IMG/VR virus record: IMGVR_UViG_3300022866_000322 | Span: 62,001-126,000 of that record | Length of the DNA: 64,000 bases | Reading direction: 5' to 3' (one strand) | Program-made: the position numbers and the translations under genes | Shown: positions 1 to 39,107 of the stretch, in pieces | Numbering within the stretch: the first letter of the stretch is position 1 | Layout of the letters: each line of letters begins with the position of its first letter | The notes under the pieces: generated by a model | Database searches by the model: none | What the model saw: the letters and a program-made list of their open reading frames with translations, nothing else | What the model was told of the DNA's origin: nothing

Positions 1-456
1 CTACAGTTTGATCAACTTTTAATAGTGGACAATGGTAGTCCAGAGCTTCCAGGCTGGGGCGATAACAGAATAATTTACAATCTTGATCGACCTTGGTTTG
101 CAAACAAGGATATCATAATATATCGTTACGAAGATACGATAGATACTGATGACCACCTAATCAGATCTGCACAAGTTGCTAAAGAATATACCACACTGTA
201 TGGTTTTGACAAATTGCTACACATGGAATCTGATGTGTACATTTTAAGCAAACGATTGGCTAAATTTATTAATGAACAAGACTTGGTAACTTTCCCTGGT
301 GAACTATGTGCAGATTACATAGGAGACAACTACGGCCAGACTCATGACGTACTACCAAACAATATAGATTATGCTACTGGAATTGGTGAAGATTGGGACG
401 ATGTACACCAAAAACATCTTGACAAGAAGCGTAATTACACATATAATAGAACTTAA
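1..456 (+). CDS. 5'-truncated ORF, glycosyltransferase (GT-A)-like
   Basis: Frame is open from base 1 (LQFDQLLIVDNGS...). IVDNGS resembles the GT2 N-terminal motif and LHMESDVYIL resembles the acidic metal-binding strand. Confidence 0.45.
   Translation, partial: LQFDQLLIVDNGSPELPGWGDNRIIYNLDRPWFANKDIIIYRYEDTIDTDDHLIRSAQVAKEYTTLYGFDKLLHMESDVYILSKRLAKFINEQDLVTFPGELCADYIGDNYGQTHDVLPNNIDYATGIGEDWDDVHQKHLDKKRNYTYNRT
419..447 (+). promoter_or_regulatory. Consensus sigma70 promoter upstream of the tRNA cluster
   Basis: TTGACA (419-424), 17 nt spacer, TATAAT (442-447). Confidence 0.85.
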
Positions 457-482
457 GAAATTAGGAAAGTTGTAGTAGTAAC

Positions 483-572
483 GGAAGTGTGGCCGAGTGG
501 CTTAAGGCGGGAGATTACTAATCTCTTGTACGTGCAAACGTACCGTGGGTTCGAATCCTACCACTTCCGCCA
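483..572 (+). tRNA. tRNA-Ser, anticodon ACU (unusual A34), long variable arm, encoded CCA
   Basis: Acceptor GGAAGTG/CACTTCC with G73 and CCA; anticodon arm GGAGA-TTACTAA-TCTCT (ACT at 517-519); variable arm GTACG...CGTAC; T loop TTCGAAT. Confidence 0.9.
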
Positions 573-602
573 AATGTTTTAACAAGATACAATGGAGATA
601 GT

Positions 603-758
603 ATGACAGTTAATAAGAAGAACAGCCCATTAACATATGAATCAGGCAAGCTAAGACTCGGTCCATTAAGCACAGGAAAACTAGAAGAAATGTTGAAAAC
701 TTGTAGACCAAGACACAAGAACAAAATTATTAACGAGATAGCAAAGAGAAGTAAATAA
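603..758 (+). CDS. Small basic hypothetical protein (51 aa) between tRNAs
   Basis: GGAGA Shine-Dalgarno at 594-598; MTVNKKNSPLTYESGKLRLGPLSTGKLEEMLKTCRPRHKNKIINEIAKRSK; below the ORF-track cutoff. Confidence 0.6.
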   Translation: MTVNKKNSPLTYESGKLRLGPLSTGKLEEMLKTCRPRHKNKIINEIAKRSK

Positions 759-764
759 ACGCAT

Positions 765-841
765 GCTGGTGTAGCTCAGTTGGTAGTAGCGCCTGCTTTG
801 TAAGCAGGATGTCGGGAGTTCGAGTCTCTCCTCCAGCACCA
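765..841 (+). tRNA. tRNA-Thr(UGU), encoded CCA
   Basis: GCTGGTG...CTCCAGC-A-CCA; anticodon arm CCTGC-TTTGTAA-GCAGG; T arm GGGAG-TTCGAGT-CTCTC. Confidence 0.9.
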
Positions 842-846
842 ACCTT

Positions 847-921
847 GTCCGGTTCGTCTATCGGTTAGGACTCGGGATTTTCATTCCCGCAAGAGGGGTT
901 CGACTCCCCTACCGGATGCCA
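847..921 (+). tRNA. tRNA-Glu(UUC), encoded CCA
   Basis: GTCCGGT...ACCGGAT-G-CCA; anticodon arm CGGGA-TTTTCAT-TCCCG; T arm AGGGG-TTCGACT-CCCCT. Confidence 0.9.
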
Positions 922-938
922 AGTATAAGGAAACACTA

Positions 939-1163
939 ATGAAAAATGGATTGCGTTGGTTCGGCTTCATACTAGCAATGGTTAGTGCTTTCCTTTTAAG
1001 CGGAGGTAATCCTGATGTGCAATGGATGGGCTGGGCAGTTGGTACAGTTAGTTCTGCAATGTGGGTTTACTTTGGTTTTAAGGATAGTGATACTCCTAGA
1101 GCATTAATGGAAGTAATGTATTTGTTACTTGCGATGAGAGGAATATATAATTGGGTAATCTAA
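939..1163 (+). CDS. Small membrane protein (about 3 TM)
   Basis: AAGGA SD; three hydrophobic segments in 74 aa. Confidence 0.7.
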   Translation: MKNGLRWFGFILAMVSAFLLSGGNPDVQWMGWAVGTVSSAMWVYFGFKDSDTPRALMEVMYLLLAMRGIYNWVI

Positions 1164-1166
1164 ATA
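1160..1166 (+). promoter_or_regulatory. T4-like late promoter motif (CTAAATA) before clpP
   Basis: Same NTAAATA motif that recurs just upstream of many genes in the window. Confidence 0.55.
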
Positions 1167-1179
1167 ATAAAGGAACAGT

Positions 1180-1770
1180 ATGTCACTAGTACCAATGGTA
1201 ATTGAAACAACGTCAAAAGGCGAACGTGCTTATGATATCTACAGTAGATTACTCAAAGAGCGTATTATTATGCTGAATGGTCCTGTGGAAGATAACATGA
1301 GTAATTTAATTGTTAGCCAACTGCTGTTCCTAGAATCAGAAGACCCAGACAAGGATATTAATTTATTTGTTAACAGTCCAGGTGGTGTTATTACAGCAGG
1401 CATGGCTATATACGATACCATGCAGTTTATCAAATGTGATGTAGCAACCTATGTGATTGGACAAGCATGTTCAATGGGGTCATTCCTAGCACAAGCAGGA
1501 GCGCCAGGCAAGCGTCACATGTTGCCCTATGCTAGACACATGATTCATCAGCCCAGTGGCGGCACACGCGGTATGCAGAGTGATATAGAAATACAGTACA
1601 AAGAAATTACCAAGATGAAAGAAATACTCACAGAGTTGTATGTTAAACACAACACAGCAGGCAAGACATATGACGACTTTGAGATTGACATGGACCGTGA
1701 TACATTCATGAGTTCAGAAGAATCATTGGAATACGGATTAATAGACAAAATTATTGACAAAAGGCCATAA
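1180..1770 (+). CDS. clpP: ATP-dependent Clp protease proteolytic subunit
   Basis: [31 protein letters not shown] (catalytic Ser), MIHQPSGG (catalytic His). Confidence 0.97.
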
Positions 1771-1791
1771 TAAACCCGGATTATTAGCTGA

Positions 1792-2490
1792 ATGGCAACT
1801 CAAGAGCAAAAAGAAAAACTGGTAGAAATACTCAAATTCACTTCATGTACATATACGATCAGTATCTCAGGATACGGCAGGGAGCACGTGGTTGGATGTA
1901 TTCCCAATCAGTCTAGTATCAAGTACCTAAAGGACAACAACATTCAGTGGGAGCATGCACTGTTTATGGATCTTGATGAGTGGGTAGACGATGGGCATAA
2001 ACTACCAGACCATCCGTTAATCGACGATGATGGTGTGTATGCACGTGACTGGAGTGAGCTGGATGACATTTGCCGTTGCTGGGGTGCTGAGCGAGGTGTT
2101 TACACCTATATATCAATTGACGATGAGAATGGCGATCCTGTAATTGAGTTCAGCACAGACTACGAAACATTAACCAATTTGGGTGTGAGTTACGAGTCGG
2201 AATCTGAGGTAGATATAGATAATGTAGAGAAGGCACAACAGTATAGAAAAAAAGGACGCTGGATTGCAGAAGTCTGCAATTTCGAAGAAGGAACGTTTTT
2301 TGTGGGTGATATAGAACTAACACAACCGTTTGACATCACAAAACTATTAGTGTATGCTTCAACTATAAACGAATCACCAGACATTATTAATGGTGTTAGT
2401 TACGATAATAATCCAATTGACTACCTTGACAATAACATTATTAACAATAGTATCGAAAGCAATCTTATTGATTTAGATGAATGGACATGA
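1792..2490 (+). CDS. Acidic hypothetical protein
   Basis: Long ORF in operon-like context; no recognised motif. Confidence 0.65.
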   Translation: MATQEQKEKLVEILKFTSCTYTISISGYGREHVVGCIPNQSSIKYLKDNNIQWEHALFMDLDEWVDDGHKLPDHPLIDDDGVYARDWSELDDICRCWGAERGVYTYISIDDENGDPVIEFSTDYETLTNLGVSYESESEVDIDNVEKAQQYRKKGRWIAEVCNFEEGTFFVGDIELTQPFDITKLLVYASTINESPDIINGVSYDNNPIDYLDNNIINNSIESNLIDLDEWT

Positions 2491-2491
2491 A

Positions 2492-2926
2492 ATGCAAACA
2501 CTTAAAGTAGGATTCACCTGCAGTACGTTTGATTTACTTCATGCCGGGCATGTGACCATGTTAGAAGATGCGAGAAGTCAATGTGACTATTTGATATGTG
2601 GATTACAGGTTGACCCTACCCTGGATCGTCCAGAAAAGAACTCACCTATACAGTCTGTGGTGGAACGATATACACAGCTCAAAGCATTATCTTGTGTAGA
2701 TGAAATAGTTCCGTATGCTTACGAACGTGACTTAGAAGATATACTCAGCATGTACAATATTGATGTGCGTATACTAGGTGATGAGTATGCTACCAAAGAC
2801 TTCACAGGTAAAGACATCTGTAAACAGCGTGGCATACAGCTATACTTTAACAAGCGTGAACACAGATTCAGTTCAAGCGAACTGCGTCAACGAGTAGCGG
2901 CTAAAGAGAAGTCTTCTTCTTCTTAG
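2492..2926 (+). CDS. Cytidylyltransferase (glycerol-3-phosphate cytidylyltransferase/TagD-like)
   Basis: GFTCSTFDLLHAGH (HxGH motif), ILGDEY, REHRFSSSELR. Start moved to ATG 2492. Confidence 0.9.
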   Translation: MQTLKVGFTCSTFDLLHAGHVTMLEDARSQCDYLICGLQVDPTLDRPEKNSPIQSVVERYTQLKALSCVDEIVPYAYERDLEDILSMYNIDVRILGDEYATKDFTGKDICKQRGIQLYFNKREHRFSSSELRQRVAAKEKSSSS

Positions 2927-3074
2927 TGGTTGACTTGGCTTTAGTTGGTTTGTACACATCAGTTATTTCAGTTGATTCCATTGGTATTGCTTTTGCCTTT
3001 TGTTTTTCTTTCGCTTCTCTTTTGGCTTGCATTTCTGCTGGAGTTATTGTGTTGCCTTTAACTTTAAAAACCAT
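2901..3074 (-). CDS. Small Lys-rich hypothetical protein, probably late
   Basis: On the minus strand, TATAAATA (3110-3103) and an AAAGGA SD precede MVFKVKGNTIT...KKKKTSL. Confidence 0.65.
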   Translation of the reverse strand: MVFKVKGNTITPAEMQAKREAKEKQKAKAIPMESTEITDVYKPTKAKSTTKKKKTSL

Positions 3075-3102
3075 GATCGACATTTCCTTTAATTGTTATA
3101 AG

Positions 3103-3110
3103 TATTTATA
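3103..3110 (-). promoter_or_regulatory. Exact T4 late promoter consensus TATAAATA
   Basis: Forward strand reads TATTTATA at 3103-3110. Confidence 0.65.
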
Positions 3111-3349
3111 TGCTGGTCGATCATTATCATCCCTTCAGGTTCCATGCAACAGTGCCATGGCCTGGACAACCAGACAATCCACAAGTGGATTGGGTATGGG
3201 GTATTGGGCAAATTGAAGACTGGTTGCAACAGTGCATTGGTTCTAGGCATCAACTATGGGCATACGATGATTGCCCTGCAACGTATCAATTAGGAGTAGC
3301 ATTCAAGTGGGACAAGGATCGAACACTTTTTGTATTAACTTGGTCATAA
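3110..3349 (+). CDS. Hypothetical protein (Trp-rich)
   Basis: 79 aa ORF abutting the next gene. Confidence 0.6.
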   Translation: MLVDHYHPFRFHATVPWPGQPDNPQVDWVWGIGQIEDWLQQCIGSRHQLWAYDDCPATYQLGVAFKWDKDRTLFVLTWS

Positions 3350-3353
3350 ACTA

Positions 3354-4511
3354 ATGGCAGAGCTCAACAAAGAGTTCTTCTGCCCAGCTCCCTTTGCAGG
3401 AGGTTATGTTGACGTAAAGAAGATAGCATATCCTTGCTGTAAAATACGTGTAACAGAATTTGAAAATGATCCAGGTTGCGACTTAACTAAAAACAACCTA
3501 TCAACAGCATATCATAGTAAATCTTTTAAAGATCTGAGGGAACAGTTCGAAAACAATGAGAAACCTGATCAATGTCAGGAATGTTGGCGTGCCGAAGACG
3601 CAGGTTGTGAGAGTGAAAGAAATCACCTAACTAAGTTAATCACTACTGATACAAACAGTTTGAATTCGGCTAACGTAGGACTTAAAAAGTTACAAATAGT
3701 GCCGAGTATCACCTGCAATTTCAAATGTAGAATTTGCGACAGTAATTTTAGTTCAGCTATTGCTATGGAAGAAATAAAATTTGCAGAGGCCGCAAATAAA
3801 GAAAAACTTTTATTAAATTTGCAAAATCGCAGTCTAATAGACATAGAATACACTAAAAGAATATTGCAAGACAGTTTATCTGGTTTGACAATGTTACAAG
3901 TATTGGGTGGCGAGCCGACACTGATGAAAAACTTGCCAGAGCTACTAGAGTATATAATTGCACAAGGAGATCACAAACACATAGACCTTGCAATTAACAC
4001 CAATGGCAGTATTTGGTCTGACCGTTTAACGGAAATACTACAAAAATTTAAAAGTTGTAAAATGCTAATTAGCATAGATGCTTTTGGTAAAAGATTTGAA
4101 GATCAACGTGGGGGTTGTTGGCAAGATATTGAAGATAATTTCGACAGATGGTTGACTGTTCCAAACGTTTCTGTAATAATAACAGCAACAGTCAGCATAC
4201 AAAATGTATTATATGTAGATGAAATTGTAGACTTTGTAAAAAGTAAAGGAGTTTTTGTAGGTTGGAATTATGTAGATGACCCTAGTGAATTATCCATAGA
4301 TAACTTAACACAGACGGCAAAAGACTTGGTATACTTGAAGTACATAAATCACGAATCTAACGAGTTGCATGGTATTGCTACTCGGGTAATGCAAACTCCA
4401 GCAGTGTCTGGACAGAAATTTATTAGCCTAATGGACCTTTACGATTTACGTAGAGGTACTAACTTTAAACAATCACATGGAGAGATATATGATGCAATGT
4501 CAGCTAAGTAG
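3354..4511 (+). CDS. Radical SAM protein with N-terminal twitch/SPASM-like Cys cluster
   Basis: CNFKCRIC (CX3CX2C), LGGEPTL, NTNG; N-terminal CPAPF...YPCC...QCQECW. Confidence 0.85.
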   Translation: MAELNKEFFCPAPFAGGYVDVKKIAYPCCKIRVTEFENDPGCDLTKNNLSTAYHSKSFKDLREQFENNEKPDQCQECWRAEDAGCESERNHLTKLITTDTNSLNSANVGLKKLQIVPSITCNFKCRICDSNFSSAIAMEEIKFAEAANKEKLLLNLQNRSLIDIEYTKRILQDSLSGLTMLQVLGGEPTLMKNLPELLEYIIAQGDHKHIDLAINTNGSIWSDRLTEILQKFKSCKMLISIDAFGKRFEDQRGGCWQDIEDNFDRWLTVPNVSVIITATVSIQNVLYVDEIVDFVKSKGVFVGWNYVDDPSELSIDNLTQTAKDLVYLKYINHESNELHGIATRVMQTPAVSGQKFISLMDLYDLRRGTNFKQSHGEIYDAMSAK

Positions 4512-4530
4512 TTTTATAGGAGACGCAATA

Positions 4531-4917
4531 GTGAACTGGAAAGAACGACTTGTAGGAGCAGTGGGTAGTTTAATAGCAATATGTTTATTGATGTGGTTGA
4601 TCATTGCAACCATTCCTGCACATGCAGGAGTAACAGGAACAGCCGCACCAGGATCAGGTGCTAACGTAAAGCCAGCAGGTGAACTGGTAATTAAGAACAA
4701 CTACTGTGTAGCATGCCACAATGTAAATGTTAAAATGGTAGGTCCGGCATTTAAAGACATAGCCGCAAAGTACACAGAAGCTGACAGAGAGTATTTGGTT
4801 GAAAAGATACTCAAAGGCAGTATGGGTGTATGGGGTCAGATTCCTATGCCACCAAATGCTGTAGACCAACAGCAAGCAAATCAAGCAATTACTTGGATCC
4901 TAAGCCTTGAAAAATAG
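4531..4917 (+). CDS. Secreted class I cytochrome c (c551/c552-like)
   Basis: AGGAG SD and GTG start; signal peptide ending PAHA; CVACH heme motif (4705-4719); VGPAFKDIAAKY; GVWGQIPMPPN (axial Met). Confidence 0.9.
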   Translation: MNWKERLVGAVGSLIAICLLMWLIIATIPAHAGVTGTAAPGSGANVKPAGELVIKNNYCVACHNVNVKMVGPAFKDIAAKYTEADREYLVEKILKGSMGVWGQIPMPPNAVDQQQANQAITWILSLEK

Positions 4918-4918
4918 G

Positions 4919-4947
4919 TTGACTTTGCTACCAAAAGAGTCTATAAT
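4919..4947 (+). promoter_or_regulatory. sigma70 promoter
   Basis: TTGACT, 17 nt, TATAAT. Confidence 0.8.
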
Positions 4948-4979
4948 ATACGTATATTATAAACACAAACAATAAAACT

Positions 4980-5321
4980 ATGACATTCTTAGACCTTATA
5001 TTTTTTATCATGCTTGGTTATCTAATCTGGAATCTATTTGCCAGTTATGTGCTAAAGCAAAAGCTATCAGCGTATGTTGCTGGCATGGAGCAAGCACGGG
5101 TTGGTGTTAAGGCACTGGAAGAAAAAGTAATGATAGTTAAAACAGAAATAATACAGTTCGAACAAGATAAAGAACTTGTGTTATTATATGATCGCAACAA
5201 CAGTTTCCTAGGACAAGGACCAACTGAAGATGAAGCCATTGATAGCATTCGCAAGGAGTACCCTACTGAAACTTTTGTTTTAGTAGATGCTGATACTAAA
5301 CTAAGCGAGCCTGCAGTATGA
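4980..5321 (+). CDS. Hypothetical protein with N-terminal membrane anchor
   Basis: Hydrophobic N-terminus; directly downstream of a promoter. Confidence 0.7.
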   Translation: MTFLDLIFFIMLGYLIWNLFASYVLKQKLSAYVAGMEQARVGVKALEEKVMIVKTEIIQFEQDKELVLLYDRNNSFLGQGPTEDEAIDSIRKEYPTETFVLVDADTKLSEPAV

Positions 5322-5701
5322 CCATGCACTTAGAAGGCCCGTGGCTCAGTACCACAGGCAAAAGCAAGCGTAAACACAAGTACCGTACAGCAGAGGCCGC
5401 ACAACAAGCAAGAAAAAATTCAGAAAATTGGAAGCAGTTGCTGGACAAGCATAACGTGCCGGAACCTGCTAAACGTGTACCCAAGCGTTTGGAAAAAAGT
5501 GTTTACGTTGAGACAAAGGGGTATCGCAGGGAGACACCGCACATACCGAGTCTGAGTACGGGTGTTGGCACAGCAGTGAAAGCGCCTGACAAGGTATACA
5601 CAGGCAACAAAATTATAGGCATAGGCACACTGCACAAATCAAATGCAGTTCCTGTGTTTAGTAATGAAGATGCAATAGCCATCAGCAAAATGAGGAGATA
5701 G
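5318..5701 (+). CDS. Basic hypothetical phage protein
   Basis: ATGA overlap with upstream gene; [23 protein letters not shown] resembles a motif I recall from large myoviruses. Confidence 0.75.
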
Positions 5702-5702
5702 A

Positions 5703-5921
5703 TTGGCAAAGGAAGAACTACTAACATTCGAAGGTGAAATAACAGACCTTCTACCAAACGCAAGTTTTCGTGTTAAGTTAGAAAACGATCACGAAATTAT
5801 AGCCACACTTGCTGGCAAACTAAGACGATTTAACATTAGAGTAGCACTTGGTGACAAGGTTGATATTGAAATGAGTCCATATGATTTAAACCGCGGACGC
5901 ATAGTATATCGCACTAAATAG
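5703..5921 (+). CDS. infA: Translation initiation factor IF-1
   Basis: [28 protein letters not shown]...[33 protein letters not shown]; TTG start. Confidence 0.95.
5914..5920 (+). promoter_or_regulatory. Late promoter motif CTAAATA, 5 nt before the SOD start codon
   Basis: CTAAATA-gtagt-ATG with no SD. Confidence 0.55.
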
Positions 5922-5925
5922 TAGT

Positions 5926-6507
5926 ATGCTTACTACAGAACTTATACCCAATCAGACGTACACTTCAGAGGATACTACTTGTCCTCGAACTAAAGCGGCG
6001 GCTTGCCAATGTGAGTCTGTTAATGCAATCTCAGAGGATCAAGATTTTACACAAGCAGTATGTGAACTAGACCACAGTGACAAAGTCAAAGGTACTATTC
6101 TTTTAGTTAGCAAACCTGGAAAAGGCACACTGATCCGAGGACAAATAACGGGCCTTGAACCCGGAGAGCACGGGTTTCACATACACGAGTATGGTGATCT
6201 AAGCAACGGATGCGAAAGTGCTGGGGCTCATTACAATCCAGACGGTGTAGACCACGGTGACATCAGCAAAGGACATGTAGGCGATCTAGGTAATGTTATT
6301 GCTAATGACAAAGGTGTTGCTAACTTTATGATAAAGGCACCCCGAGTGGATCTAACAGGAGATCGGAGTGTTGTAGGTAGAGCAATAGTAATACATAGCA
6401 AACAAGATGACCTTGGAAAAGGCGGAGACGAAGAATCATTGAAGACTGGGAATGCTGGTGATCGACTGGCATGTGGAGTTATAGTCTTACGTGGTTCTGA
6501 TGATTAG
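5926..6507 (+). CDS. sodC: Cu/Zn superoxide dismutase with N-terminal extension
   Basis: GFHIHEYGD, GAHYNP, HG...HVGDLGN, VIHSKQDDLG, GNAGDRLACGVI. Confidence 0.95.
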   Translation: MLTTELIPNQTYTSEDTTCPRTKAAACQCESVNAISEDQDFTQAVCELDHSDKVKGTILLVSKPGKGTLIRGQITGLEPGEHGFHIHEYGDLSNGCESAGAHYNPDGVDHGDISKGHVGDLGNVIANDKGVANFMIKAPRVDLTGDRSVVGRAIVIHSKQDDLGKGGDEESLKTGNAGDRLACGVIVLRGSDD

Positions 6508-6552
6508 TGATGTCTACCTAATGGTTAATGGTACTTTTGTATTGGAGAATTT

Positions 6553-6702
6553 ATGAATACTAAAGGAATATGCAGAGCATGCTTGCATGCCGCACACTGT
6601 GGACACAGTTGTGTAGATGAACACTGCGACTACTGCACAGAATGTTATTGTGAAAAATGCAACCCTATAAAGGAAGAACATTATGGAAATATTAACAGTT
6701 GA
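6553..6702 (+). CDS. Cys/His-rich 49-aa peptide, metallothionein-like
   Basis: GGAG SD; [49 protein letters not shown] (9 Cys, 5 His); missed by the ORF track. Confidence 0.7.
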
Positions 6703-7015
6703 ACAAAGCGCAACAAGTAAACTAAAAGAACTTATCGCAGAAGAAGACAACCCAAACCTTAAACTGCGTATATTTGTGCAAGGTGGCGGCTGTAGTGGCT
6801 TCCAATATGGGTTTACATTCGACGAAGACACTGCTGATGATGATTACAGCATAGATGCCGGTGACGGAGTTGGTATTCTAATAGATCATATGAGTGCAGA
6901 ATACCTTAAAGGTTCCACAATCAAGTTCACAAAGGATTTGATGAGCCAAAGTTTTGCTATTGTCAACCCTAATGCTACAGCAACTTGCGGATGTGGAAGC
7001 AGTTTTAACGCATAA
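6683..7015 (+). CDS. erpA: A-type Fe-S carrier (ErpA/IscA/HesB family)
   Basis: [20 protein letters not shown] and [14 protein letters not shown]. Confidence 0.92.
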
Positions 7016-7045
7016 CCCCCCAAAACCTTAAACTTTATAACTGCC

Positions 7046-7052
7046 ATAAATA
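7046..7052 (+). promoter_or_regulatory. Late promoter motif ATAAATA before the structural block
   Basis: Directly upstream of GAGG SD and the 1745-aa fibre gene. Confidence 0.6.
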
Positions 7053-7071
7053 CTCTGTATGAGGATGATTT

Positions 7072-10000
7072 ATGGCACAACAAATAATTGATATCGGAAC
7101 GTCCGCAGGTGACGGGACCGGTGACGAACTTCGAATAGCGTTTGATAAAGCAAATGATAACTTTACTGAACTATACTCTACCGCCGAAAACAGTGGACTA
7201 ACTTATTCGAATGTATCTACCATCACAAGTGGATCAGGTACAGACGCTAGATTTACAGTCAATCGTTACGCTAACACCTATACTGTTGATATTATTAACA
7301 GTGCTGGTAACAACTATGCTGTATCAGATACACTAACGATATTTGGTAACGCACTAGGTGGCACGTCGGGCGTAAATGATGTAACTCTTACAGTCCTCAC
7401 ACTAGGAAACGCAACAGTAGGAAACATTGCTACCATAAGCAATGTTGGTGCTCCTGCTAATCCAGTTCTCACTGTCAACGGGCAGACTGGAGATGTAACA
7501 CTAGACGTAAACGATATTGCAAATGCCGCAAGCAAAGGTTATGTAACCAATGCTATAAACGGTAACATTGCAACCTTAAGCTCAAGCTTCAACAGTGTTA
7601 ACGCCAACGTTACCGCGGCAAACAGTGCCATATCAACTCATACAAGTCAGATACAAACACTAGACGCCAACGTTGGTACACTATGGGGCAACGTAGGAGG
7701 ATTGGCCGCTACTAGAGCAACCATAAGTTATGTCGACACCAGCATCAACAACGCACTAAGCTCAAATGCTATTCTTGCCAACGTTACTAGTATCAATGCT
7801 AATGTTACTGCCGCAAATGTAAACATTGAAAACAACAGAGCCAATTTGGTAATATTCCGTGCTAACTTAGGTGTGCAGGATCTGCTGTTGGATGCGCTTG
7901 ATGCTAATGTAGGCACAATTGTTGGCAATACCAGTACTACATTCTACACACTGGTGGCCAATGCCGCTACACAAAGTGTTGCAATTACCAACAATCTTAA
8001 TCAGATAAACAACTTATTCAGCAATGCTGGGGTACAAGCAGACTCAATTAACAATCTAACTGCTAATGCCGCTACACAAGGTGCCAAGCTCGATTCGATC
8101 GATGCAAACTTGGGTGTGGCAACAACCAATATCTCAGCATTACAAAGCAACACTGGTGTTACAACAAACGAAGTTAACCTACTTCGTGCAAACATCACAG
8201 CCGCCAATGCAACTATTGGAAGCAACGATGCAGACATACTAGCAATTAATGCTAACTTGGGTTTGAGATCAACTGAGATTATTTCGTTAGATGCCAACCT
8301 TGGCACAGCAACAACCAATATCACAAGCCTTACCAGTAATGCCGCTACGCAGGCCACTAGCATTAACACACTTACTAGTAATGCCGCTACACAAGCAACT
8401 AGTATTGACACCTTAACTGCTAACGCAGGCACACAGGCTACTAGTATTGTTACACTCACATCAAACGCCGCGGCACAAAGTGTTGCACTTGTTGACCTGC
8501 AAAACAATGCAGGCGTACAAGGCGATAGTATTCGCACAATTGATGCCAATCTTGGCACGGTTGTTGGTACAACTATCCCTGCTATTGATGCTAACTTAGG
8601 AGCGTATCAAACAACTATTAACGCTAACCTGGGCACAAGAACAACTGAAATACAAACACTAGATGCTAACGTAGGTTACATCAGAACAAACTATGCAAAC
8701 ACTGCAACCAGCGCAACATTCACAGGCAATGTGGGTGCTTCCTATCTACTAGCAACTGCCAATGTTAAAATTGACGGTGTACTTGAAGTTGGATTAGCAC
8801 CAAGTTTATCTTGGCCCAACGAAGGTGCTGTGTTTACAGGTAACATAAATGCTGGTTACGAAATAGTTACACAGAACAAGAGTACTGGTACGAGCGCAAC
8901 ATCAAATTATGTTGCATACGCTAATGATGCTATACTTGGTAGTGGAGCTACCAAATACGTAGCTGTTGGCATAAACAACAGCACATTTACAGGAAACTTT
9001 ATACCTGCAGGGGTTGACAGCAAGATAGTACAATATGCACACGACGGATATTTCCAAACCGTTGGAGGCAATGCCCAGGTACAATCAGACACAGGCGTAG
9101 TTTTACAAGCAAACACAGCTTTGGCAAAACTAAACAAAGACGGCAACTTCCAACTTGTTACTGGTAACTTAACGTTTGCTGACAGTACTATACAGTCAAG
9201 TGCATTTACTGGAGGAACCTGGGCAGCCGTAGATGCTAATATCGGTGGCATAAGTGACGGAGTTACCGTTAACAGCAACGCTATATTTGCAATTAGAGCA
9301 AACACTGGATCATTCCAGACTTATGCTAACTTAAATATCAGCCAAATTAATGCAAACATGGCGGCTGCTAATGCTGTTATTGCAACCGTTGATACTGCGG
9401 CAATAGCGGCAATTAATGCAAATGTAACCGCGGCAAATGTAAACATTGCAACACTTGATGCCAATATTGGTGTAGTAGTTGGTACAACTATACCAGGCAT
9501 AAATGCCAACTTAGGTACTGTAGTTGGTACAACTATCCCAGCTATTGATGCTAATTTAGGAACAGCAACTACAAATATTACAACTGTGAATGCTAACGTA
9601 ACTGCCGCAAACTTAGCAATTACCACTGTGAATAATAATGTAACTGCCGCAAACTTAGCAATTACAACAATTGATGCTAATGTAGGTACAATTGTAGGCA
9701 CAACTATTCCTGCTATTGATGCAAACATTGGTACTACTGTTGGTACAACTATCCCAGCAATTGATGCTAATGTAGGTACAATTGTAGGCACAACTATTCC
9801 TGCTATTGATGCTAATGTAGGTACAATTGTAGGCACAACCATACCGTCACTTGCAACTTTGTCAAGTTTCAATACACTTGATGCCAATGTTGGTGTGGTA
9901 GTTGGTACAACTATACCAGGTATAAATGCTAACTTGGGAATTGTAGTTGGCACCACTATACCAGCTATTGATGCTAACTTGGGCACAACTGTTGGCACAA

Positions 10001-12309
10001 CTATCCCAGCAATTGATGCTAACTTAGGCACAGCAACAACTAATATAACAACACTTGATGCTAACGTAGGCACAACTGTTGGCACAACCCTACCAACACT
10101 AAATGCAAATATTGGAGCATACCAAACTTACGCTAATGCTAATTTTAGTGGTAGCACCTATGGTGATGCTAATGTAGCCGCTTATAACGGTAACATGAAC
10201 AACCTGGGCACAGTTACTACAGGAACAATAAACGCAACTACTGGTAATATTACAAACCTTGGTGCCACACTGACTACAGTCGCGCAACCAAATATCACAA
10301 GTGTAGGGCAGTTGACCTCACTGAATGTGTTTGGCAACGCCATTGTTAACGGTAACTTAACGGTTGCAAACCTAAACAGTATTGCAAGTCACACAATTAA
10401 CGTACAAGACCCATTGTTGTACTTGACTGCAAATACAGTATATCCATACAACTACGACATTGGTACGTTTAGTCAATTCGTTGGTGGGTCCGCTAATGTT
10501 TATCAACACACAGGTGTTGTGCGTGATTACACCGACAGCACTTGGAAAGTATTCAGTAATGTTGATGCAGAACCTGGTGCAACAATAAACTGGGCAGACA
10601 CAGACATAATATGGGATAGATTAAGAGTTGGTAACTTAACAATTGCCAACACCACAGCATCAACAACCTCCACAACTGGAGCATTGATACTTGCAGGTGG
10701 TGCTGGCGTAGCAGGAGCAATTAATTCCGCAGGAAACGTTGGAGCTCCGCATGTAAATGCTACAACCTCAATACAAGCACCCACTATCAATGCCGCTACA
10801 AGTTTAACAGCAGTAGCCGCAACAATCAGTGCTAATGCAAGTGTAAATCATCTTAATGCTACAACATCAATACAAGCACCCACTATCAATGCCGCTACTG
10901 CACTTACAGCAGTAGCCGCAACAATCAGTGCAAATGCAAGTGTAAACCATCTTAATGCTACAACCTCAATACAAGCACCCACTATCAATGCCGCTACTGC
11001 ACTTACAGCAGTAGCCGCTACAATTAGTGCTAACGTAGGTGCAAGTCATGTAAACGTAACAAACTCATTGCAAGCTACTACTGTTAACGGTGATACAGTA
11101 AATGCTGGCACATTACAAATTGGTGCCGGTAGTATTACTGCTACAGCGGCAGAGCTTAACGTTCTTGATAATGCTGTAGCAGATACCGTAGTAAGTAGTA
11201 AGGGTGTAATTTACAGTTCAGCAGGTAATATCAGAGCAAATGCATTTAACACAACTGGAAGTTTACAAGCAGTTACAGTAAACGCTACTGGAAACGTAGG
11301 CGGAGTACACTTGAATGCAACCACAAGTGTACAAGCACCAACTATTAATGCCGCTACAAGTTTAACAGCCGTGGCTGCAACGATTAGTGCTAACGCCGCT
11401 GTAAATCACTTGAATGCAACTACAAGCGTACAAGCACCAACTATCAACGCCGCTACAAGTTTAACAGCAGTGGCTGCAACAATCAGTGCAAATGCAAGTG
11501 TAAATCACTTGAATGCAACCACAAGTGTACAAGCACCAACTATTAATGCCGCTACAGCACTTACAGCAGTGGCCGCAACAATCAGTGCTAACTTAGCCGC
11601 AAGTCATGTAAATGTAACCAACACAGTACAAGCTGCCACAGTAAACGGAACCACAGCAGTAACGGGAGCCGCAGGTACGTTCAGTGCTAATGTAGGTGCC
11701 AATCATGTCATTGCCTCAACAAGCATGCAGGCACCAACTATTAATGCCGCTACAGCACTTACAGCAGTGGCCGCAACAATCAGTGCAAATGCAAGTGTAA
11801 ATCACTTGAATGCAACCACAAGTGTACAAGCACCAACTATTAATGCCGCTGGAAACGTAAGCGCGATACACGGAAACTTCAGTGGCAACGTTTCAGCGAC
11901 ATACTTTGCAGGTACTGCTACTGGAGCTCTATATGCTGACTTGGCAGAGAATTATCAGGCAGATACTACATACGATCCAGGTACTGTATTGGTATTTGGC
12001 GGTGAACAGGAAGTTACAGTTACAACTGTATCACATGATGAAAGAGTAGCAGGTATTGTTAGTACAAATCCAGCCTACTTGATGAACACAGGCGGCGGAA
12101 GTGTTGCAGTTGGACTTACAGGACGTTTACCGTGTATGGTTCAAGGACCAGTTAACAAAGGTACACTGCTAGTAACAAGCGCGACGCCAGGTGTTGCTGT
12201 AGCATTGGACAGGACACAGTATCAGCCGGGATGTGTTATTGGTAAGAGCTTAGAAATAATTGAAGACAACTCTGTTGCACTAATTGAAGTAGCAGTAGGT
12301 AGATACTAA
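7072..12309 (+). CDS. Long tail fibre/adhesin-like structural protein with C-terminal chaperone-like domain
   Basis: N-terminal IDIGTSAGDGTGDELRIAFDKANDNFTELY (T4 gp9/gp10-type baseplate-attachment motif); A/T/N/G-rich repeats; C-terminal YADLAENY...STNPAYLMN...GRLPC domain typical of fibre intramolecular chaperones. Confidence 0.85.
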   Translation: MAQQIIDIGTSAGDGTGDELRIAFDKANDNFTELYSTAENSGLTYSNVSTITSGSGTDARFTVNRYANTYTVDIINSAGNNYAVSDTLTIFGNALGGTSGVNDVTLTVLTLGNATVGNIATISNVGAPANPVLTVNGQTGDVTLDVNDIANAASKGYVTNAINGNIATLSSSFNSVNANVTAANSAISTHTSQIQTLDANVGTLWGNVGGLAATRATISYVDTSINNALSSNAILANVTSINANVTAANVNIENNRANLVIFRANLGVQDLLLDALDANVGTIVGNTSTTFYTLVANAATQSVAITNNLNQINNLFSNAGVQADSINNLTANAATQGAKLDSIDANLGVATTNISALQSNTGVTTNEVNLLRANITAANATIGSNDADILAINANLGLRSTEIISLDANLGTATTNITSLTSNAATQATSINTLTSNAATQATSIDTLTANAGTQATSIVTLTSNAAAQSVALVDLQNNAGVQGDSIRTIDANLGTVVGTTIPAIDANLGAYQTTINANLGTRTTEIQTLDANVGYIRTNYANTATSATFTGNVGASYLLATANVKIDGVLEVGLAPSLSWPNEGAVFTGNINAGYEIVTQNKSTGTSATSNYVAYANDAILGSGATKYVAVGINNSTFTGNFIPAGVDSKIVQYAHDGYFQTVGGNAQVQSDTGVVLQANTALAKLNKDGNFQLVTGNLTFADSTIQSSAFTGGTWAAVDANIGGISDGVTVNSNAIFAIRANTGSFQTYANLNISQINANMAAANAVIATVDTAAIAAINANVTAANVNIATLDANIGVVVGTTIPGINANLGTVVGTTIPAIDANLGTATTNITTVNANVTAANLAITTVNNNVTAANLAITTIDANVGTIVGTTIPAIDANIGTTVGTTIPAIDANVGTIVGTTIPAIDANVGTIVGTTIPSLATLSSFNTLDANVGVVVGTTIPGINANLGIVVGTTIPAIDANLGTTVGTTIPAIDANLGTATTNITTLDANVGTTVGTTLPTLNANIGAYQTYANANFSGSTYGDANVAAYNGNMNNLGTVTTGTINATTGNITNLGATLTTVAQPNITSVGQLTSLNVFGNAIVNGNLTVANLNSIASHTINVQDPLLYLTANTVYPYNYDIGTFSQFVGGSANVYQHTGVVRDYTDSTWKVFSNVDAEPGATINWADTDIIWDRLRVGNLTIANTTASTTSTTGALILAGGAGVAGAINSAGNVGAPHVNATTSIQAPTINAATSLTAVAATISANASVNHLNATTSIQAPTINAATALTAVAATISANASVNHLNATTSIQAPTINAATALTAVAATISANVGASHVNVTNSLQATTVNGDTVNAGTLQIGAGSITATAAELNVLDNAVADTVVSSKGVIYSSAGNIRANAFNTTGSLQAVTVNATGNVGGVHLNATTSVQAPTINAATSLTAVAATISANAAVNHLNATTSVQAPTINAATSLTAVAATISANASVNHLNATTSVQAPTINAATALTAVAATISANLAASHVNVTNTVQAATVNGTTAVTGAAGTFSANVGANHVIASTSMQAPTINAATALTAVAATISANASVNHLNATTSVQAPTINAAGNVSAIHGNFSGNVSATYFAGTATGALYADLAENYQADTTYDPGTVLVFGGEQEVTVTTVSHDERVAGIVSTNPAYLMNTGGGSVAVGLTGRLPCMVQGPVNKGTLLVTSATPGVAVALDRTQYQPGCVIGKSLEIIEDNSVALIEVAVGRY
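8329..8490 (+). repeat. In-frame 14-aa (42 nt) tandem repeats, coiled-coil type
   Basis: LTSNAATQATSINT / LTSNAATQATSIDT / LTANAGTQATSIVT. Confidence 0.8.
9451..10100 (+). repeat. In-frame 15-aa (45 nt) tandem repeats
   Basis: IDANVGTIVGTTIPA-type units; near-identical DNA copies at about 9671 and 9761. Confidence 0.85.
10750..11850 (+). repeat. In-frame 33-aa (99 nt) repeats in blocks
   Basis: HLNATTSIQAPTINAATALTAVAATISANASVN-type units, about 9-10 copies including degenerate ones. Confidence 0.85.
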
Positions 12310-24573: not shown

Positions 24574-25091
24574 ATTCACTTTATATCGATATGGACGGTG
24601 TGGTCGCAGACTTTGACCGTTATGCACATCAAAAACTAGGAATTGGACCTAGTGAAGGGAAATACCCACAAAACGTGTGGAAAGTACTGATAGAGAACCC
24701 TAGACTATATAGGGATTTAAAACCCACTCCTTATGCTACAGAATTATACGATTTGTGCCACAAAACAGCAAAAAAACTAGACTATAGGGTCGCTTTTTTA
24801 ACTGCTATACCCAGGAAGAATGATGTACAGTACGCTATGTATGATAAGGTAAACTGGGTCCAAAAGAATTTTCCAGACACTCCTGTGTTCTTTGGACCTT
24901 ATAGTAGAGACAAACAGAATCATTGTCGTACTGGTGACATCTTAATTGACGATAGATCAGATAACATTCAAGAATGGAAAGACGCGGGTGGTGTTGGGAT
25001 ACTGCACAAGGACTACGACGTCACTGTTAAAAAACTAAAAGGTTTTGTGGACTTTCATGCACATTTGCCACAAGTCTCGTTGCAACTGTAG
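24570..25091 (+). CDS. HAD-family 5'(3')-deoxyribonucleotidase-like
   Basis: YIDMDGVVADF, FLTA, ILIDDR, AGGVGILH. Confidence 0.88.
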   Translation: MNSLYIDMDGVVADFDRYAHQKLGIGPSEGKYPQNVWKVLIENPRLYRDLKPTPYATELYDLCHKTAKKLDYRVAFLTAIPRKNDVQYAMYDKVNWVQKNFPDTPVFFGPYSRDKQNHCRTGDILIDDRSDNIQEWKDAGGVGILHKDYDVTVKKLKGFVDFHAHLPQVSLQL

Positions 25092-38330: not shown

Positions 38331-39107
38331 ATGGCCACCAAACCATTACTACAGGAAACGATACCACAGCGTTCGTTAATATTTGCACAACTAGCACAAA
38401 TCGCCTACGACGAGCTTGCAGATGCAAAGAAAAAAGCCAGGAAACTGGGCTTTACCACAGTAGAATTTTACGACTTTGACGGTGCGCAGGCTTATCGTTT
38501 TCAAAACAAACACGACTTAGTTATTGCTTGTCGCGGCACACAGCCAACAGAATTTAACGACATCAAAGCAGACCTACGTGCGTTGCCTATCATGGCAGAG
38601 ACCATTGGGCGTGTACACAAAGGCTTTAAGAAAGAAGTAGACGAGCTTTGGCCAATGATACTAGAAGATATCAGTCGCACAGTTAACACAAACAATACAC
38701 TGTGGTTTTGTGGACATAGCCTAGGAGCCGCAATGGCAACCATCATGGCGTCAAGGTGTTTTTATGAGCGTAACATACAAAACCCATACGAGTTATACAC
38801 ATATGGTTCACCACGGGTAGGATGGCGCAAGTATGTTAAAACACTAGGAGTAAAACACATACGTTGGCAAAACAACAACGATATTGTTACTCGTGTGCCA
38901 CTATGGTGTATGGGATATGTACACCACGGTGAAAGACACTACATGAACGCATACGGCCAAGTACGCAATCCGTCAGGATGGCAACTTGTAAAAGATCGCT
39001 TCCGCGGCATGTGGATGGGACTTAAACAAGGCAAAATAGACAACTTTGGAGATCATTCAATGGTTGAGTATGTTGCCAACTTAGAAAACTATAACAAGAA
39101 CATATAA
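38331..39107 (+). CDS. Lipase, class 3 (alpha/beta hydrolase)
   Basis: IACRGT, GRVHKGF, GHSLGAA (GxSxG), TYGSPRVG, NDIVTRVP, DHSM. Confidence 0.9.
   Translation: MATKPLLQETIPQRSLIFAQLAQIAYDELADAKKKARKLGFTTVEFYDFDGAQAYRFQNKHDLVIACRGTQPTEFNDIKADLRALPIMAETIGRVHKGFKKEVDELWPMILEDISRTVNTNNTLWFCGHSLGAAMATIMASRCFYERNIQNPYELYTYGSPRVGWRKYVKTLGVKHIRWQNNNDIVTRVPLWCMGYVHHGERHYMNAYGQVRNPSGWQLVKDRFRGMWMGLKQGKIDNFGDHSMVEYVANLENYNKNI

What the first reader, a model, noticed from the sequence alone, without database searches (positions are those of the whole stretch)
4531..4917. Phage-encoded periplasmic cytochrome c
Seen: signal peptide, CVACH heme site and distal PM motif in a gene with its own SD, embedded among phage genes. 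Established: class I cytochromes c shuttle electrons in the periplasm and need host maturation machinery. To my knowledge they are rarely reported in phages. Inference: an auxiliary gene that sustains or redirects host respiration during infection; its closest homologues should point to the host.
Basis: partly seen in the sequence, partly recalled or inferred. Interest (0 to 1): 0.65.

Follow-up and report, generated by a model that had tools for sequence, protein, structure and literature searches.

The report
Jumbo-phage cytochrome c551 gene
A large uncultivated salt-lake/marine bacteriophage carries an intact, selectively maintained gene for a small haem protein (cytochrome c551) that bacteria use to pass electrons in respiration, a kind of host-metabolism gene found in none of 50,697 GenBank phage records.

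Summary
Window 4531-4917 (+) encodes a 128-aa protein with an export signal, CVACH haem site, distal Met106 and a Shine-Dalgarno site. Its domain is about 50% identical to solved Pseudomonas c551 and Nitrosomonas c552 (E 3e-23), and the predicted fold superposes at 1.3-1.6 A.

The contig is a phage: a 221 kb IMG/VR record, about 63% complete, with a T4-type capsid gene closest to PA5oct/Atu_ph07-like jumbo myoviruses. The locus is not chimeric. Three independent assemblies are collinear at 99.8%, and an 88%-identical strain keeps the same gene order.

About 30 protein clusters form a virus-only clade (SH-aLRT 97). It is under strong purifying selection (dN/dS 0.03-0.12). Most members carry a conserved 19-residue N-terminal extension absent from cellular c551s.

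No homologue exists in 50,697 GenBank phages or in BFVD. The nearest cellular proteins are at most 59% identical and scattered over Beta/Gammaproteobacteria, so the gene does not name the host.

The same phage also encodes a second cytochrome, similar to those associated with PQQ dehydrogenases. It encodes no oxidase, PQQ dehydrogenase or haem-attachment gene.

Best reading: an auxiliary electron-carrier gene, a respiratory counterpart of cyanophage plastocyanin. Function and haem binding remain untested.

The parts
4518..4522 (+). Shine-Dalgarno AGGAG, 8 nt before the start codon
   Evidence: Sequence. Conserved in the diverged strains L002/L003.
4531..4917 (+). Cytochrome c551-type gene, 128 codons plus TAG stop (GTG start)
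   Evidence: The start is confirmed by comparison and by a relative's deletion joint at 4528.
4531..4623 (+). Residues 1-31: export signal. n-region NWKER, a 24-residue hydrophobic helix, and A-H-A before Gly32. Either a cleaved Sec signal or an uncleaved membrane anchor.
   Evidence: AlphaFold helix 3-26. Hydrophobic core of 24 residues against a median of 15 and maximum of 19 in 80 cellular c551s. The -1 Ala/Ser and +1 Gly are conserved across the clade. dN/dS is 0.45, relaxed as signal peptides usually are.
4624..4680 (+). Residues 32-50: phage-clade-specific Gly/Thr/Ala/Pro-rich extension (GVTGTAAPGSGANVKPAGE), predicted to be disordered
   Evidence: Nearly invariant in the jumbo-phage clade and absent from cellular homologues. 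6 synonymous and 0 non-synonymous changes against L002. pLDDT 48-71. An exact 28-nt word at 4641-4668 is shared with a diverged co-occurring gene.
4681..4914 (+). Residues 51-128: c551/c552 (c8) domain
   Evidence: PDB phmmer E 2.7e-23, about 50% identity. Foldseek TM (target-normalised) 0.83-0.91, rmsd 1.3-1.6 A to 351c, 2d0s and 3zox. pLDDT above 90. dN/dS 0.026-0.12.
4705..4719 (+). CVACH haem-attachment motif (Cys59, Cys62, His63 proximal ligand)
   Evidence: Sequence. Invariant in 80 homologues.
4846..4848 (+). Met106, predicted distal haem ligand in IPMPPN
   Evidence: Aligned to Met61 of P. aeruginosa c551. Conserved in at least 90% of homologues.
4919..4947 (+). Near-consensus sigma-70-type promoter (TTGACT-17-TATAAT) directly after the stop codon. 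It marks the 3' boundary of the cytochrome's transcription unit and heads the next gene (4980-5321).
   Evidence: 11 of 12 consensus matches. The intergenic region is 98% conserved in L002/L003, although dS is 0.42 in the coding part.

Best explanation
The gene encodes a functional, haem-binding, c551/c552-type class I cytochrome c.

Proposed mechanism:
1. The phage expresses the protein in the infected cell.
2. The Sec pathway exports it through its N-terminal signal.
3. The host's cytochrome c maturation system attaches haem covalently to Cys59/Cys62 in the periplasm. The phage carries no such genes in the 221 kb held.
4. It then acts as a small one-electron carrier. It accepts electrons from the host bc1 complex, or from a periplasmic dehydrogenase-linked cytochrome, and donates them to host terminal oxidases or reductases.
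5. This keeps proton-motive force and ATP supply up while host gene expression declines.

It is the respiratory counterpart of the plastocyanin and ferredoxin genes of cyanophages.

Shown:
- family membership and intact ligand residues;
- phage location;
- a monophyletic virus-only clade;
- purifying selection;
- occurrence in several phage genome contexts;
- presence in RNA libraries.

Inferred: export, haem attachment, redox partners and the benefit to the phage.

The conserved 19-residue extension, together with the unusually long hydrophobic N-terminus, is most simply read as a tether or docking arm. If the signal is not cleaved, it would hold the domain at the membrane.
For: Family membership:
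- PDB sequence match to c551/c552, E 2.7e-23.
- Predicted fold at rmsd 1.3-1.6 A.
- All haem ligands and structural Trp/Pro/Gly residues conserved.

Phage identity:
- Capsid gene gp23, E 1e-98, on the same contig.
- Nearest capsid proteins are from jumbo myoviruses: Phosso, Vibrio 2.275.O, PA5oct and Atu_ph07, at 67-76%.
- Family B polymerase, PhoH and MazG are present.

Not chimeric:
- Collinear at 99.8% with three independent UViGs over 10.9 kb.
- Synteny is kept in an 88%-identical strain.

Selection: dN/dS is 0.026 (domain, against L002) and 0.10-0.12 against more distant copies. The extension shows 6 synonymous and 0 non-synonymous changes.

Spread: 31 jumbo-phage rows plus two extension-less phage proteins form one clade, SH-aLRT 97. 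The gene sits in at least three different phage neighbourhoods. A separate T4-like phage has an independently placed c551-like gene.

RNA: metatranscriptome contigs cover 4627-4842 with 3 mismatches (marine) and 4657-4862 (salt marsh).

Dependence on the host: no CcmF/CcsA, no haem-copper oxidase and no PQQ dehydrogenase in the 221 kb held.

Precedent:
- Cyanophage petE occurs in 70 of 153 genomes (PMC10452541).
- Phage soxD has cytochrome c motifs, and its authors remark that carriers rather than enzymes are favoured by phages (PMC8190135).
Against: - No biochemical evidence: haem binding, export and partners are untested.
- The host is unknown, so it is not shown that the host has a maturation system or c551-dependent enzymes.
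- The RNA evidence comes from assembled contigs of relatives in metatranscriptomes, which can contain DNA and cannot show level or timing.
- The record is only about 63% complete, so absence of partner genes is provisional.
- The conserved extension has no counterpart in characterised c551s, so the protein may do something that ordinary c551 does not.
- No promoter could be assigned to the gene.
Confidence: 0.6

Rival explanations
1. Two-cytochrome relay for alcohol/C1 oxidation. The c551 works with the phage's second cytochrome, which resembles those associated with PQQ dehydrogenases (cL/XoxG-like). Electrons would pass from the host's periplasmic PQQ methanol/ethanol dehydrogenase to the phage cL-like cytochrome, then to the phage c551 (in the role of cytochrome cH), then to the terminal oxidase.
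For: - The same 221 kb record encodes a second exported mono-haem cytochrome (L101:4197-4628; Pfam Cytochrome_CBB3 8.8e-9). Its best PDB matches are cytochrome cL and c551i.
- Its closest cellular relative (74% identity) lies directly after a PQQ methanol/ethanol-family dehydrogenase (TIGR03075, 549 bits, above the cut-off) and a MoxJ-like binding protein.
- That MAG also has a c551-type gene.
- Named cellular hits of the second cytochrome are Burkholderiales/Betaproteobacteria MAGs.
Against: - The second cytochrome scores far below the MoxG equivalog cut-off (41 against 148 bits).
- An 80%-complete 289 kb relative with the c551 gene has no copy of it.
- The two genes lie about 62 kb apart.
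- The phage has no PQQ dehydrogenase.
- Co-occurrence could not be tested further, because the other viral contigs are short.
- The equivalence of c551 and cH in methylotrophs rests on memory only.
Confidence: 0.18
2. Oxidative-stress module. The cytochrome donates electrons to a host periplasmic cytochrome c peroxidase, or scavenges superoxide directly. It would act with the neighbouring Cu/Zn superoxide dismutase and ErpA to limit oxidative damage during infection.
For: - The gene lies in a conserved block with Cu/Zn SOD (5926-6507; Pfam 4.6e-45) and ErpA (6683-7015; NF010147, 146 bits, above the cut-off).
- From general knowledge, c551 is an electron donor of bacterial dihaem cytochrome c peroxidases.
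Against: - The phage SOD has no hydrophobic N-terminus, so it is not predicted to share the periplasm with the cytochrome.
- In the other phage lineages the cytochrome gene sits beside unrelated genes: AdoMet decarboxylase and lipase, or 2OG-Fe(II) oxygenases.
- ErpA is explained just as well by the four or more radical-SAM genes in the window.
Confidence: 0.12
3. Membrane-anchored variant, a difference in topology rather than in role. The N-terminus is not cleaved. The protein would be a tethered c551, like cytochrome cy or Paracoccus c552. The 19-residue extension would be the flexible arm that lets the domain shuttle between membrane complexes without being lost from a leaky periplasm.
For: - The hydrophobic core is 24 residues, longer than in any of 80 cellular c551 signals (maximum 19).
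- AlphaFold gives a 24-residue helix followed by a disordered stretch.
- The extension is conserved at protein level.
Against: - Small residues at -1 and -3 (A-H-A, V-W-A, L-H-A and others) before an invariant Gly are kept across the clade, as at signal-peptidase sites.
- The second subtype has a hydrophobic stretch of only about 19-20 residues.
- The linker is much shorter than in cytochrome cy (from memory).
- No signal-peptide or topology predictor was available.
Confidence: 0.3
4. Artefact or passenger: a cellular gene brought in by mis-assembly, or a recently captured gene drifting without function.
For: - Logan contigs of two DNA runs break inside the gene at 4641-4668.
- The gene's GC content (42.6%) is slightly above the window's (39.9%).
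Against: - The break is a graph branch. It is caused by a 28-nt word shared with a second, diverged cytochrome-bearing contig. Both flanking contigs overlap there and match at about 99.9%.
- Three independent assemblies are collinear across the gene.
- Synteny holds in a diverged strain.
- dN/dS is far below 1.
- No cellular genome has a close copy.
Confidence: 0.02

Closest known systems
Cytochrome c551 / c552 (c8 family, class ID): Pseudomonas aeruginosa NirM c551 (PDB 351c), Nitrosomonas europaea c552 (1a56, 3zow), Hydrogenophilus/Hydrogenobacter c552
   Same: - An approximately 80-residue domain at about 46-56% identity.
- CXXCH near the domain's N-terminus.
- Distal Met in the PMPP motif.
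- Conserved Trp, Pro and Gly.
- Predicted fold at rmsd 1.3-1.6 A.
- An exported protein.

   Different: - It is encoded by a phage.
- It carries a conserved 19-residue extension between the signal and the domain.
- Its N-terminal hydrophobic segment is unusually long.
- It has a two-residue shorter loop after the KY(T) position.
- It belongs to a virus-only clade at most 59% identical to any cellular copy.
Cyanophage plastocyanin (petE) and ferredoxin (petF) auxiliary metabolic genes
   Same: A small soluble one-electron carrier encoded by a large myovirus, working between host membrane complexes. PetE is also exported by a signal peptide, and the phage versions differ from host versions (PMC10452541).
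   Different: - A different protein family and cofactor: covalent haem, which needs the host's maturation machinery, instead of copper or Fe-S.
- A non-cyanobacterial host, presumably a respiring proteobacterium.
- Respiration rather than photosynthesis.
Phage soxD (c-type cytochrome subunit of sulfane dehydrogenase SoxCD) in sulfur-oxidiser phages
   Same: A c-type cytochrome motif encoded on phage genomes, interpreted as relieving an electron-transfer bottleneck (PMC8190135).
   Different: SoxD is a subunit of a specific enzyme and usually sits next to soxC. The present gene is a free-standing general carrier of another cytochrome family. SoxX is only a marginal NCBIfam hit (E 0.008).
Membrane-anchored cytochromes c (Rhodobacter cy, Paracoccus c552)
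   Same: An N-terminal hydrophobic helix, then a flexible Ala/Pro/Gly-rich linker, then a class I cytochrome domain.
   Different: The domain belongs to the c551 family, not the c2 family. The linker is only about 19 residues. A signal-peptidase-like A-X-A site is conserved. Anchoring is not shown.

Membership tests
Cytochrome c551/c552 (c8, class ID) | A single CXXCH haem-attachment motif near the N-terminus of the mature domain, with His as proximal ligand | tested here: met
   CVACH at residues 59-63. Invariant in 80 homologues.
Cytochrome c551/c552 (c8, class ID) | Distal Met ligand in the Pro-rich (I/V)PMPP(N) loop | tested here: met
   Met106 in IPMPPN aligns with Met61 of 351c/2pac.
Cytochrome c551/c552 (c8, class ID) | Significant sequence similarity over the whole ~80-residue domain to characterised members | tested here: met
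   phmmer against the PDB gives E 2.7e-23 to 2e-16 for 16 c551/c552 entries, covering query residues 50-126.
Cytochrome c551/c552 (c8, class ID) | Compact c551 fold | tested here: met
   AlphaFold pLDDT is above 90 for residues 49-125. Foldseek TM (target-normalised) is 0.83-0.91 at rmsd 1.3-1.6 A. This is a prediction, not a solved structure.
Cytochrome c551/c552 (c8, class ID) | Export to the periplasm by an N-terminal signal | tested here: inconclusive
   A basic n-region, a hydrophobic helix and A-H-A are present. The hydrophobic core is 24 residues, longer than in cellular members. No signal or topology predictor was available.
Cytochrome c551/c552 (c8, class ID) | Covalently bound haem c, alpha band near 551-552 nm, high positive potential | not testable with these tools
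   Needs expression with a maturation system, followed by spectroscopy.
Phage auxiliary metabolic gene | Lies inside a bona fide phage genome with phage genes on both sides | tested here: met
   Capsid gene on the contig. Fibre, polymerase, PhoH and MazG in the window. Collinear independent assemblies.
Phage auxiliary metabolic gene | Maintained by selection in phages rather than a transient capture | tested here: met
   A virus-only clade of 33 rows, SH-aLRT 97. dN/dS 0.026-0.17.
Phage auxiliary metabolic gene | Expressed during infection | tested here: inconclusive
   Contigs from two metatranscriptome runs cover the gene at 95-99% identity. These are contigs of relatives and may derive from DNA.
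Membrane-anchored cytochrome c (cy-type) | Uncleaved N-terminal transmembrane anchor | tested here: inconclusive
   A 24-residue helix set against a conserved A-X-A|G site.
Cytochrome cL / MoxG (applies to the second phage cytochrome, P0124, not to the finding) | Score above the TIGR03872 equivalog cut-off | tested here: not met
   41.4 bits against a cut-off of 147.8. Only the gene neighbourhood of its closest cellular relative supports the link.

The most novel reading that the evidence does not exclude
A group of marine and salt-lake jumbo phages carries its own periplasmic electron-transfer kit. One part is a cytochrome similar to those associated with PQQ dehydrogenases (cL/XoxG-like). 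The other is a c551 modified with a phage-specific tether or docking arm. Together they would wire the host's methanol/ethanol dehydrogenase, or its bc1 complex, to the terminal oxidase during infection. Viruses would then directly boost C1/alcohol-driven respiration in abundant streamlined proteobacteria.
Probability: 0.15. Interest if true: 0.8.

Novelty: new member of a known kind. Interest (0 to 1): 0.55.

Why it matters
Auxiliary metabolic genes for electron carriers are well documented for photosynthesis in cyanophages. They are barely documented for aerobic or anaerobic respiration of heterotrophic and chemolithotrophic hosts.

A c-type cytochrome is a demanding cargo. It is useless unless the host exports it and attaches haem. 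Its maintenance under strong purifying selection in a virus-only clade, found in salt-lake, salt-marsh and open-ocean data, therefore argues that respiratory electron flux is a real bottleneck for these phages.

The protein is small and easy to express with a ccm plasmid. The phage-specific extension gives a concrete handle for asking how a viral carrier differs from the host's own.

The gene does not identify the host. That is a caution for host prediction from AMG homology.

Tried and rejected
- **Host from closest homologues.** The word search of 5.8 billion proteins and the scan of 185,579 species genomes gave only viral close relatives. Cellular hits were at most 59% identical and taxonomically scattered. 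The tree places the viral clade beside Tepidiphilus and unnamed metagenomic sequences with weak support, 76-81. Cluster names gave nothing finer than Burkholderiales or Proteobacteria.
- **GenBank phages.** tblastn found no match for either cytochrome. The record's own genome may be excluded from that collection.
- **BFVD fold search.** Nothing at E <= 1e-3.
- **Partner or maturation genes in the 221 kb record.** PQQ_2, Cytochrom_C_asm and COX1 are all absent. The record is about 63% complete.
- **Terminase family PF03237.** Not found. Phage identity therefore rests on the capsid gene and other genes.
- **Co-occurrence of the two cytochromes.** The 289 kb relative lacks the second one. Other viral contigs with it are at most 44 kb. 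ENA/TARA scaffolds are not held.
- **Context of c551 in the MAG with the closest second-cytochrome relative.** It lies next to UbiA, which is uninformative.
- **Promoter scan.** The total number of sites equals the chance expectation. Only the site at 4919-4947 is notable.
- **NCBIfam 'cytochro_C551' and 'cytochro_C550' models.** Scores are far below the cut-offs. I take these exception models to represent Bacillus-type cytochromes and gave them no weight.
- **Literature.** No paper uses 'phage-encoded cytochrome' or similar phrases. The one hit for 'viral cytochrome c' concerns cbb3 oxidase reads in viromes.

Full report
**Observation**

Window 4531-4917 (+) is an open frame of 128 codons.

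- It starts at GTG 4531, 8 nt after AGGAG (4518-4522) and 19 nt after the TAG stop of the upstream radical-SAM gene.
- Gene callers in public data often extend the frame to upstream ATGs, giving 142-146 aa proteins. Comparison shows this is wrong.
- In a strain with 88% nucleotide identity (L002/L003), the stop, the SD and the start position are conserved, and the start is ATG. The window's upstream ATGs are not conserved.
- A salt-marsh relative that lacks the radical-SAM gene altogether joins at 4528.

**What it is**

- Pfam Cytochrom_C scores 31.6 bits against a cut-off of 21.3.
- phmmer against all PDB chains gives E 2.7e-23 to Pseudomonas aeruginosa c551. Comparable values follow for P. 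stutzeri c551, Nitrosomonas europaea c552, and Hydrogenophilus and Hydrogenobacter c552. These matches cover residues 50-126 at about 50% identity, with Met106 on the distal ligand Met61.
- In an 80-sequence alignment C59, C62, H63, K68, G71, P72, K80, G96, G99, W101, G102, P105 and P107 are invariant. M106, N109 and W122 are conserved in at least 90%.
- AlphaFold (mean pLDDT 83.9) gives a 24-residue N-terminal helix (residues 3-26), a low-confidence stretch (27-48) and a confident domain (49-125, pLDDT above 90).
- The domain superposes on solved c551/c552 structures with target-normalised TM 0.83-0.91 and rmsd 1.3-1.6 A.
- Every sequence-level defining feature of the c551/c552 (c8) family is met. 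Haem attachment and spectrum cannot be tested here.

**The replicon is a phage, and the locus is not chimeric**

The window is bases 62,001-126,000 of a 221,342-bp IMG/VR virus record, estimated 63% complete.

Evidence that it is a phage:
- The contig carries a T4-type gp23 capsid gene (E 1e-98).
- The closest isolated relatives of that capsid are jumbo myoviruses: Sinorhizobium Phosso 76%, Vibrio 2.275.O 71%, Pseudomonas PA5oct 70% and Agrobacterium Atu_ph07 67%.
- The window holds family B DNA polymerase, a clamp loader, PhoH, MazG, ClpP/ClpA, DnaJ, a 1,745-aa repeat fibre and three tRNAs. Nearly all genes are on one strand.

- Window 1-10,914 is collinear at 99.75-99.84% with three other IMG/VR contigs from different metagenomes.
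- A diverged strain from another sample keeps the order ClpP ... cytidylyltransferase, radical SAM, cytochrome, two small ORFs, IF-1, Cu/Zn SOD, ErpA, fibre.
- The DNA occurs in 14 salt-lake metagenome runs.
- Logan contigs of two of those runs do break at 4641-4668. The two pieces overlap there by 28 nt and match the window at about 99.9%. A third contig carrying a diverged cytochrome gene shares exactly that word. This is a de Bruijn-graph branch between co-occurring related phages, not a join of unrelated DNA.
- The gene's GC content (42.6%) is close to the window's (39.9%).

**A viral clade with its own signature**

- The word-based search of 5.8 billion proteins returned about 30 clusters with full-length similarity (54-96% identity). 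Next came ordinary 100-110-aa cellular c551s that match the domain only.
- On a tree of 201 domains, the 31 full-length relatives plus two 103-aa proteins form one group with SH-aLRT 97. The neighbouring group (Tepidiphilus and unnamed sequences) is weakly supported.
- The two 103-aa proteins also sit on phage-like contigs, among runs of small same-strand ORFs, two 2OG-Fe(II) oxygenases, DUF7220 and a cupin.
- More distant members lie in another jumbo-phage context, between AdoMet decarboxylase and a class-3 lipase, next to radical-SAM and B12-radical-SAM genes. These contigs reach 289 kb.
- A T4-like 63 kb contig has a further, long-branched c551-like gene between the gp41-type helicase and DUF6267. 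This is probably an independent capture.
- One cluster includes a TARA Oceans gene. The family therefore occurs in salt lakes, salt marshes and the open ocean.

Most members of the clade share a 19-residue segment, GVTGTAAPGSGANVKPAGE, between the hydrophobic N-terminus and the c551 domain. No cellular homologue has it.

- The segment is conserved at the protein level. Against L002 it shows 6 synonymous and 0 non-synonymous differences. Against the 56%-identical copy its dN/dS is 0.09.
- The domain has dN/dS 0.026 (dS 0.42) to 0.12. The signal region has 0.45.

**Signal or anchor?**

- The residue before the segment is always Ala or Ser, and position -3 is small or aliphatic. That pattern is expected at a signal-peptidase site.
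- The hydrophobic core of the window's protein is 24 residues. In 80 cellular c551 signals the median is 15 and the maximum 19.
- I cannot decide between a cleaved signal that leaves a 97-aa soluble protein and an uncleaved anchor with a short tether.

**Rarity**

- tblastn against 50,697 GenBank phage records found no homologue at E <= 1e-3.
- Foldseek against BFVD found nothing at E <= 1e-3.
- Full-text searches found no description of a phage c551/c552.

The nearest reports are:
- viral cbb3 oxidase reads in Indian Ocean viromes (PMC3474794);
- a preprint listing bc1 and CcmEFH genes in a Nitrosospira jumbo phage;
- one 'cytochrome C551' in an RNA-virome AMG list;
- phage soxD (PMC8190135).

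**Host**

- The best cellular matches among 185,579 species genomes are 42-59% identical. They come from Accumulibacter, Pseudomonas/Stutzerimonas, Nitrosomonas, Tepidiphilus, Sphaerotilus, Zoogloea and others, all Gamma/Betaproteobacteria.
- The gene therefore points only to that class.

**A second cytochrome**

A scan of the whole record for CXXCH found one more credible gene, outside the window.

- It is L101:4197-4628, 143 aa, with a typical signal peptide and a CSFCH motif.
- Pfam Cytochrome_CBB3 gives 8.8e-9. The best PDB matches are cytochrome cL and c551i.
- Its closest cellular relative (74% identity) lies directly downstream of a PQQ methanol/ethanol-family dehydrogenase (TIGR03075, 549 bits) and a MoxJ-like binding protein, in a roughly 1.8 Mb MAG. 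That MAG also has a c551-type gene.
- The phage protein is far below the MoxG equivalog cut-off. I call it dehydrogenase-associated-like, not cL.
- Phage versions at 90-92% identity are common: 72 member sequences, in scaffolds up to 134 kb, including TARA.
- The 289 kb relative has no copy.
- The record has no PQQ dehydrogenase, CcmF/CcsA or haem-copper oxidase. The phage supplies carriers only.

**Mechanism**

Shown:
- an intact c551-family gene;
- a phage location;
- a virus-only, selectively constrained lineage;
- presence in metatranscriptome contigs, marine at 4627-4842 with 3 mismatches and salt marsh at 4657-4862.

Inferred:
- Sec export and haem attachment by the host system;
- electron transfer between host bc1, or a dehydrogenase-linked cytochrome, and host terminal oxidases or reductases;
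- the result that energy supply is sustained during infection.

The logic is the same as for cyanophage plastocyanin and ferredoxin. It also fits the remark that phages favour carriers over enzymes.

Rivals:
- a two-cytochrome relay for alcohol/C1 oxidation (about 0.18);
- an oxidative-stress role with the neighbouring SOD and ErpA (about 0.12). This is weakened because the SOD lacks an export signal and the neighbourhood differs in other phages;
- a membrane-tethered topology (about 0.3). This concerns form, not role, and is compatible with the main reading;
- artefact or passenger (about 0.02).

**Verdict**

The interpretation as an auxiliary respiratory gene is reasonable and now better founded, but the host-pointing expectation fails.

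It is a new member of two known kinds, the c551 family and phage electron-carrier AMGs. It has a phage-specific extension and a companion cytochrome that deserve experiments. Interest is 0.55.

Noticed in passing
L101:4197-4628 (+) = G000:C1:4197-4628, about 57.4 kb upstream of the window: A second exported mono-haem cytochrome c in the same phage (143 aa, CSFCH, Pfam Cytochrome_CBB3). The best PDB matches are cytochrome cL and c551i. Its closest cellular relative (74%) follows a PQQ methanol/ethanol-family dehydrogenase and a MoxJ-like gene. It has no homologue in GenBank phages, but is common in marine viral contigs.
   Followed up: partly
window 4919-4947 (+), intergenic 4918-4979: A near-consensus sigma-70 promoter (TTGACT-17-TATAAT) lies right after the cytochrome's stop codon. 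The whole 62-nt spacer is 98% conserved in a strain whose coding dS is 0.42.
   Followed up: partly
window 5703-5921, 5926-6507, 6683-7015 (+): A conserved block of bacterial-type IF-1, a Cu/Zn superoxide dismutase and ErpA (Fe-S insertion protein, above the NCBIfam cut-off). The SOD has no hydrophobic signal and carries a Cys-containing ~50-residue N-terminal extension.
   Followed up: partly
window 3354-4511 (+); 25055-26050 (-); 58470-60035 (+): Several radical-SAM genes (twitch-domain and SPASM types). The one upstream of the cytochrome is 385 aa here and 507 aa in a related strain. It is absent in a salt-marsh relative (RNA contig joint 3343->4528).
   Followed up: partly
window 1180-1770, 39823-40662, 40677-42944 (+): A phage-encoded proteostasis set: ClpP, a DnaJ-type co-chaperone and a ClpA-type ATPase (809 bits, below the ClpA equivalog cut-off).
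   Followed up: no
window 483-572 (+): ARAGORN calls a 90-nt tRNA-Ser with anticodon ACT, an unusual A34 anticodon. tRNA-Thr(TGT) and tRNA-Glu(TTC) lie next to it.
   Followed up: no
window 7072-12309 (+): A 1,745-aa protein made largely of short Ala/Asn/Thr-rich repeats ('IDANLGT...'-type), presumably a fibre. Its length varies between strains: the alignment with L002 is interrupted here.
   Followed up: no
window 4641-4668 (+): A 28-nt exact word in the extension-coding segment is shared with a diverged cytochrome gene of a co-occurring phage. This splits short-read graph assemblies inside the gene, so it is a potential site of chimeric assemblies or of recombination between phages.
   Followed up: partly
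L013:5947-6243 (+) (IMG/VR contig of 63 kb): A T4-like phage (family B polymerase, UvsX, gp41-type helicase, DUF6267) carries a separate 98-aa c551-like gene without the extension. It sits on a long branch near Zoogloea sequences, which suggests a second, independent capture.
   Followed up: partly
window 38331-39107 (+); L012:6453-7244; L004:9348-10112: A class-3 lipase gene is present in the window. In the other jumbo-phage lineage it lies immediately downstream of the cytochrome gene.
   Followed up: no
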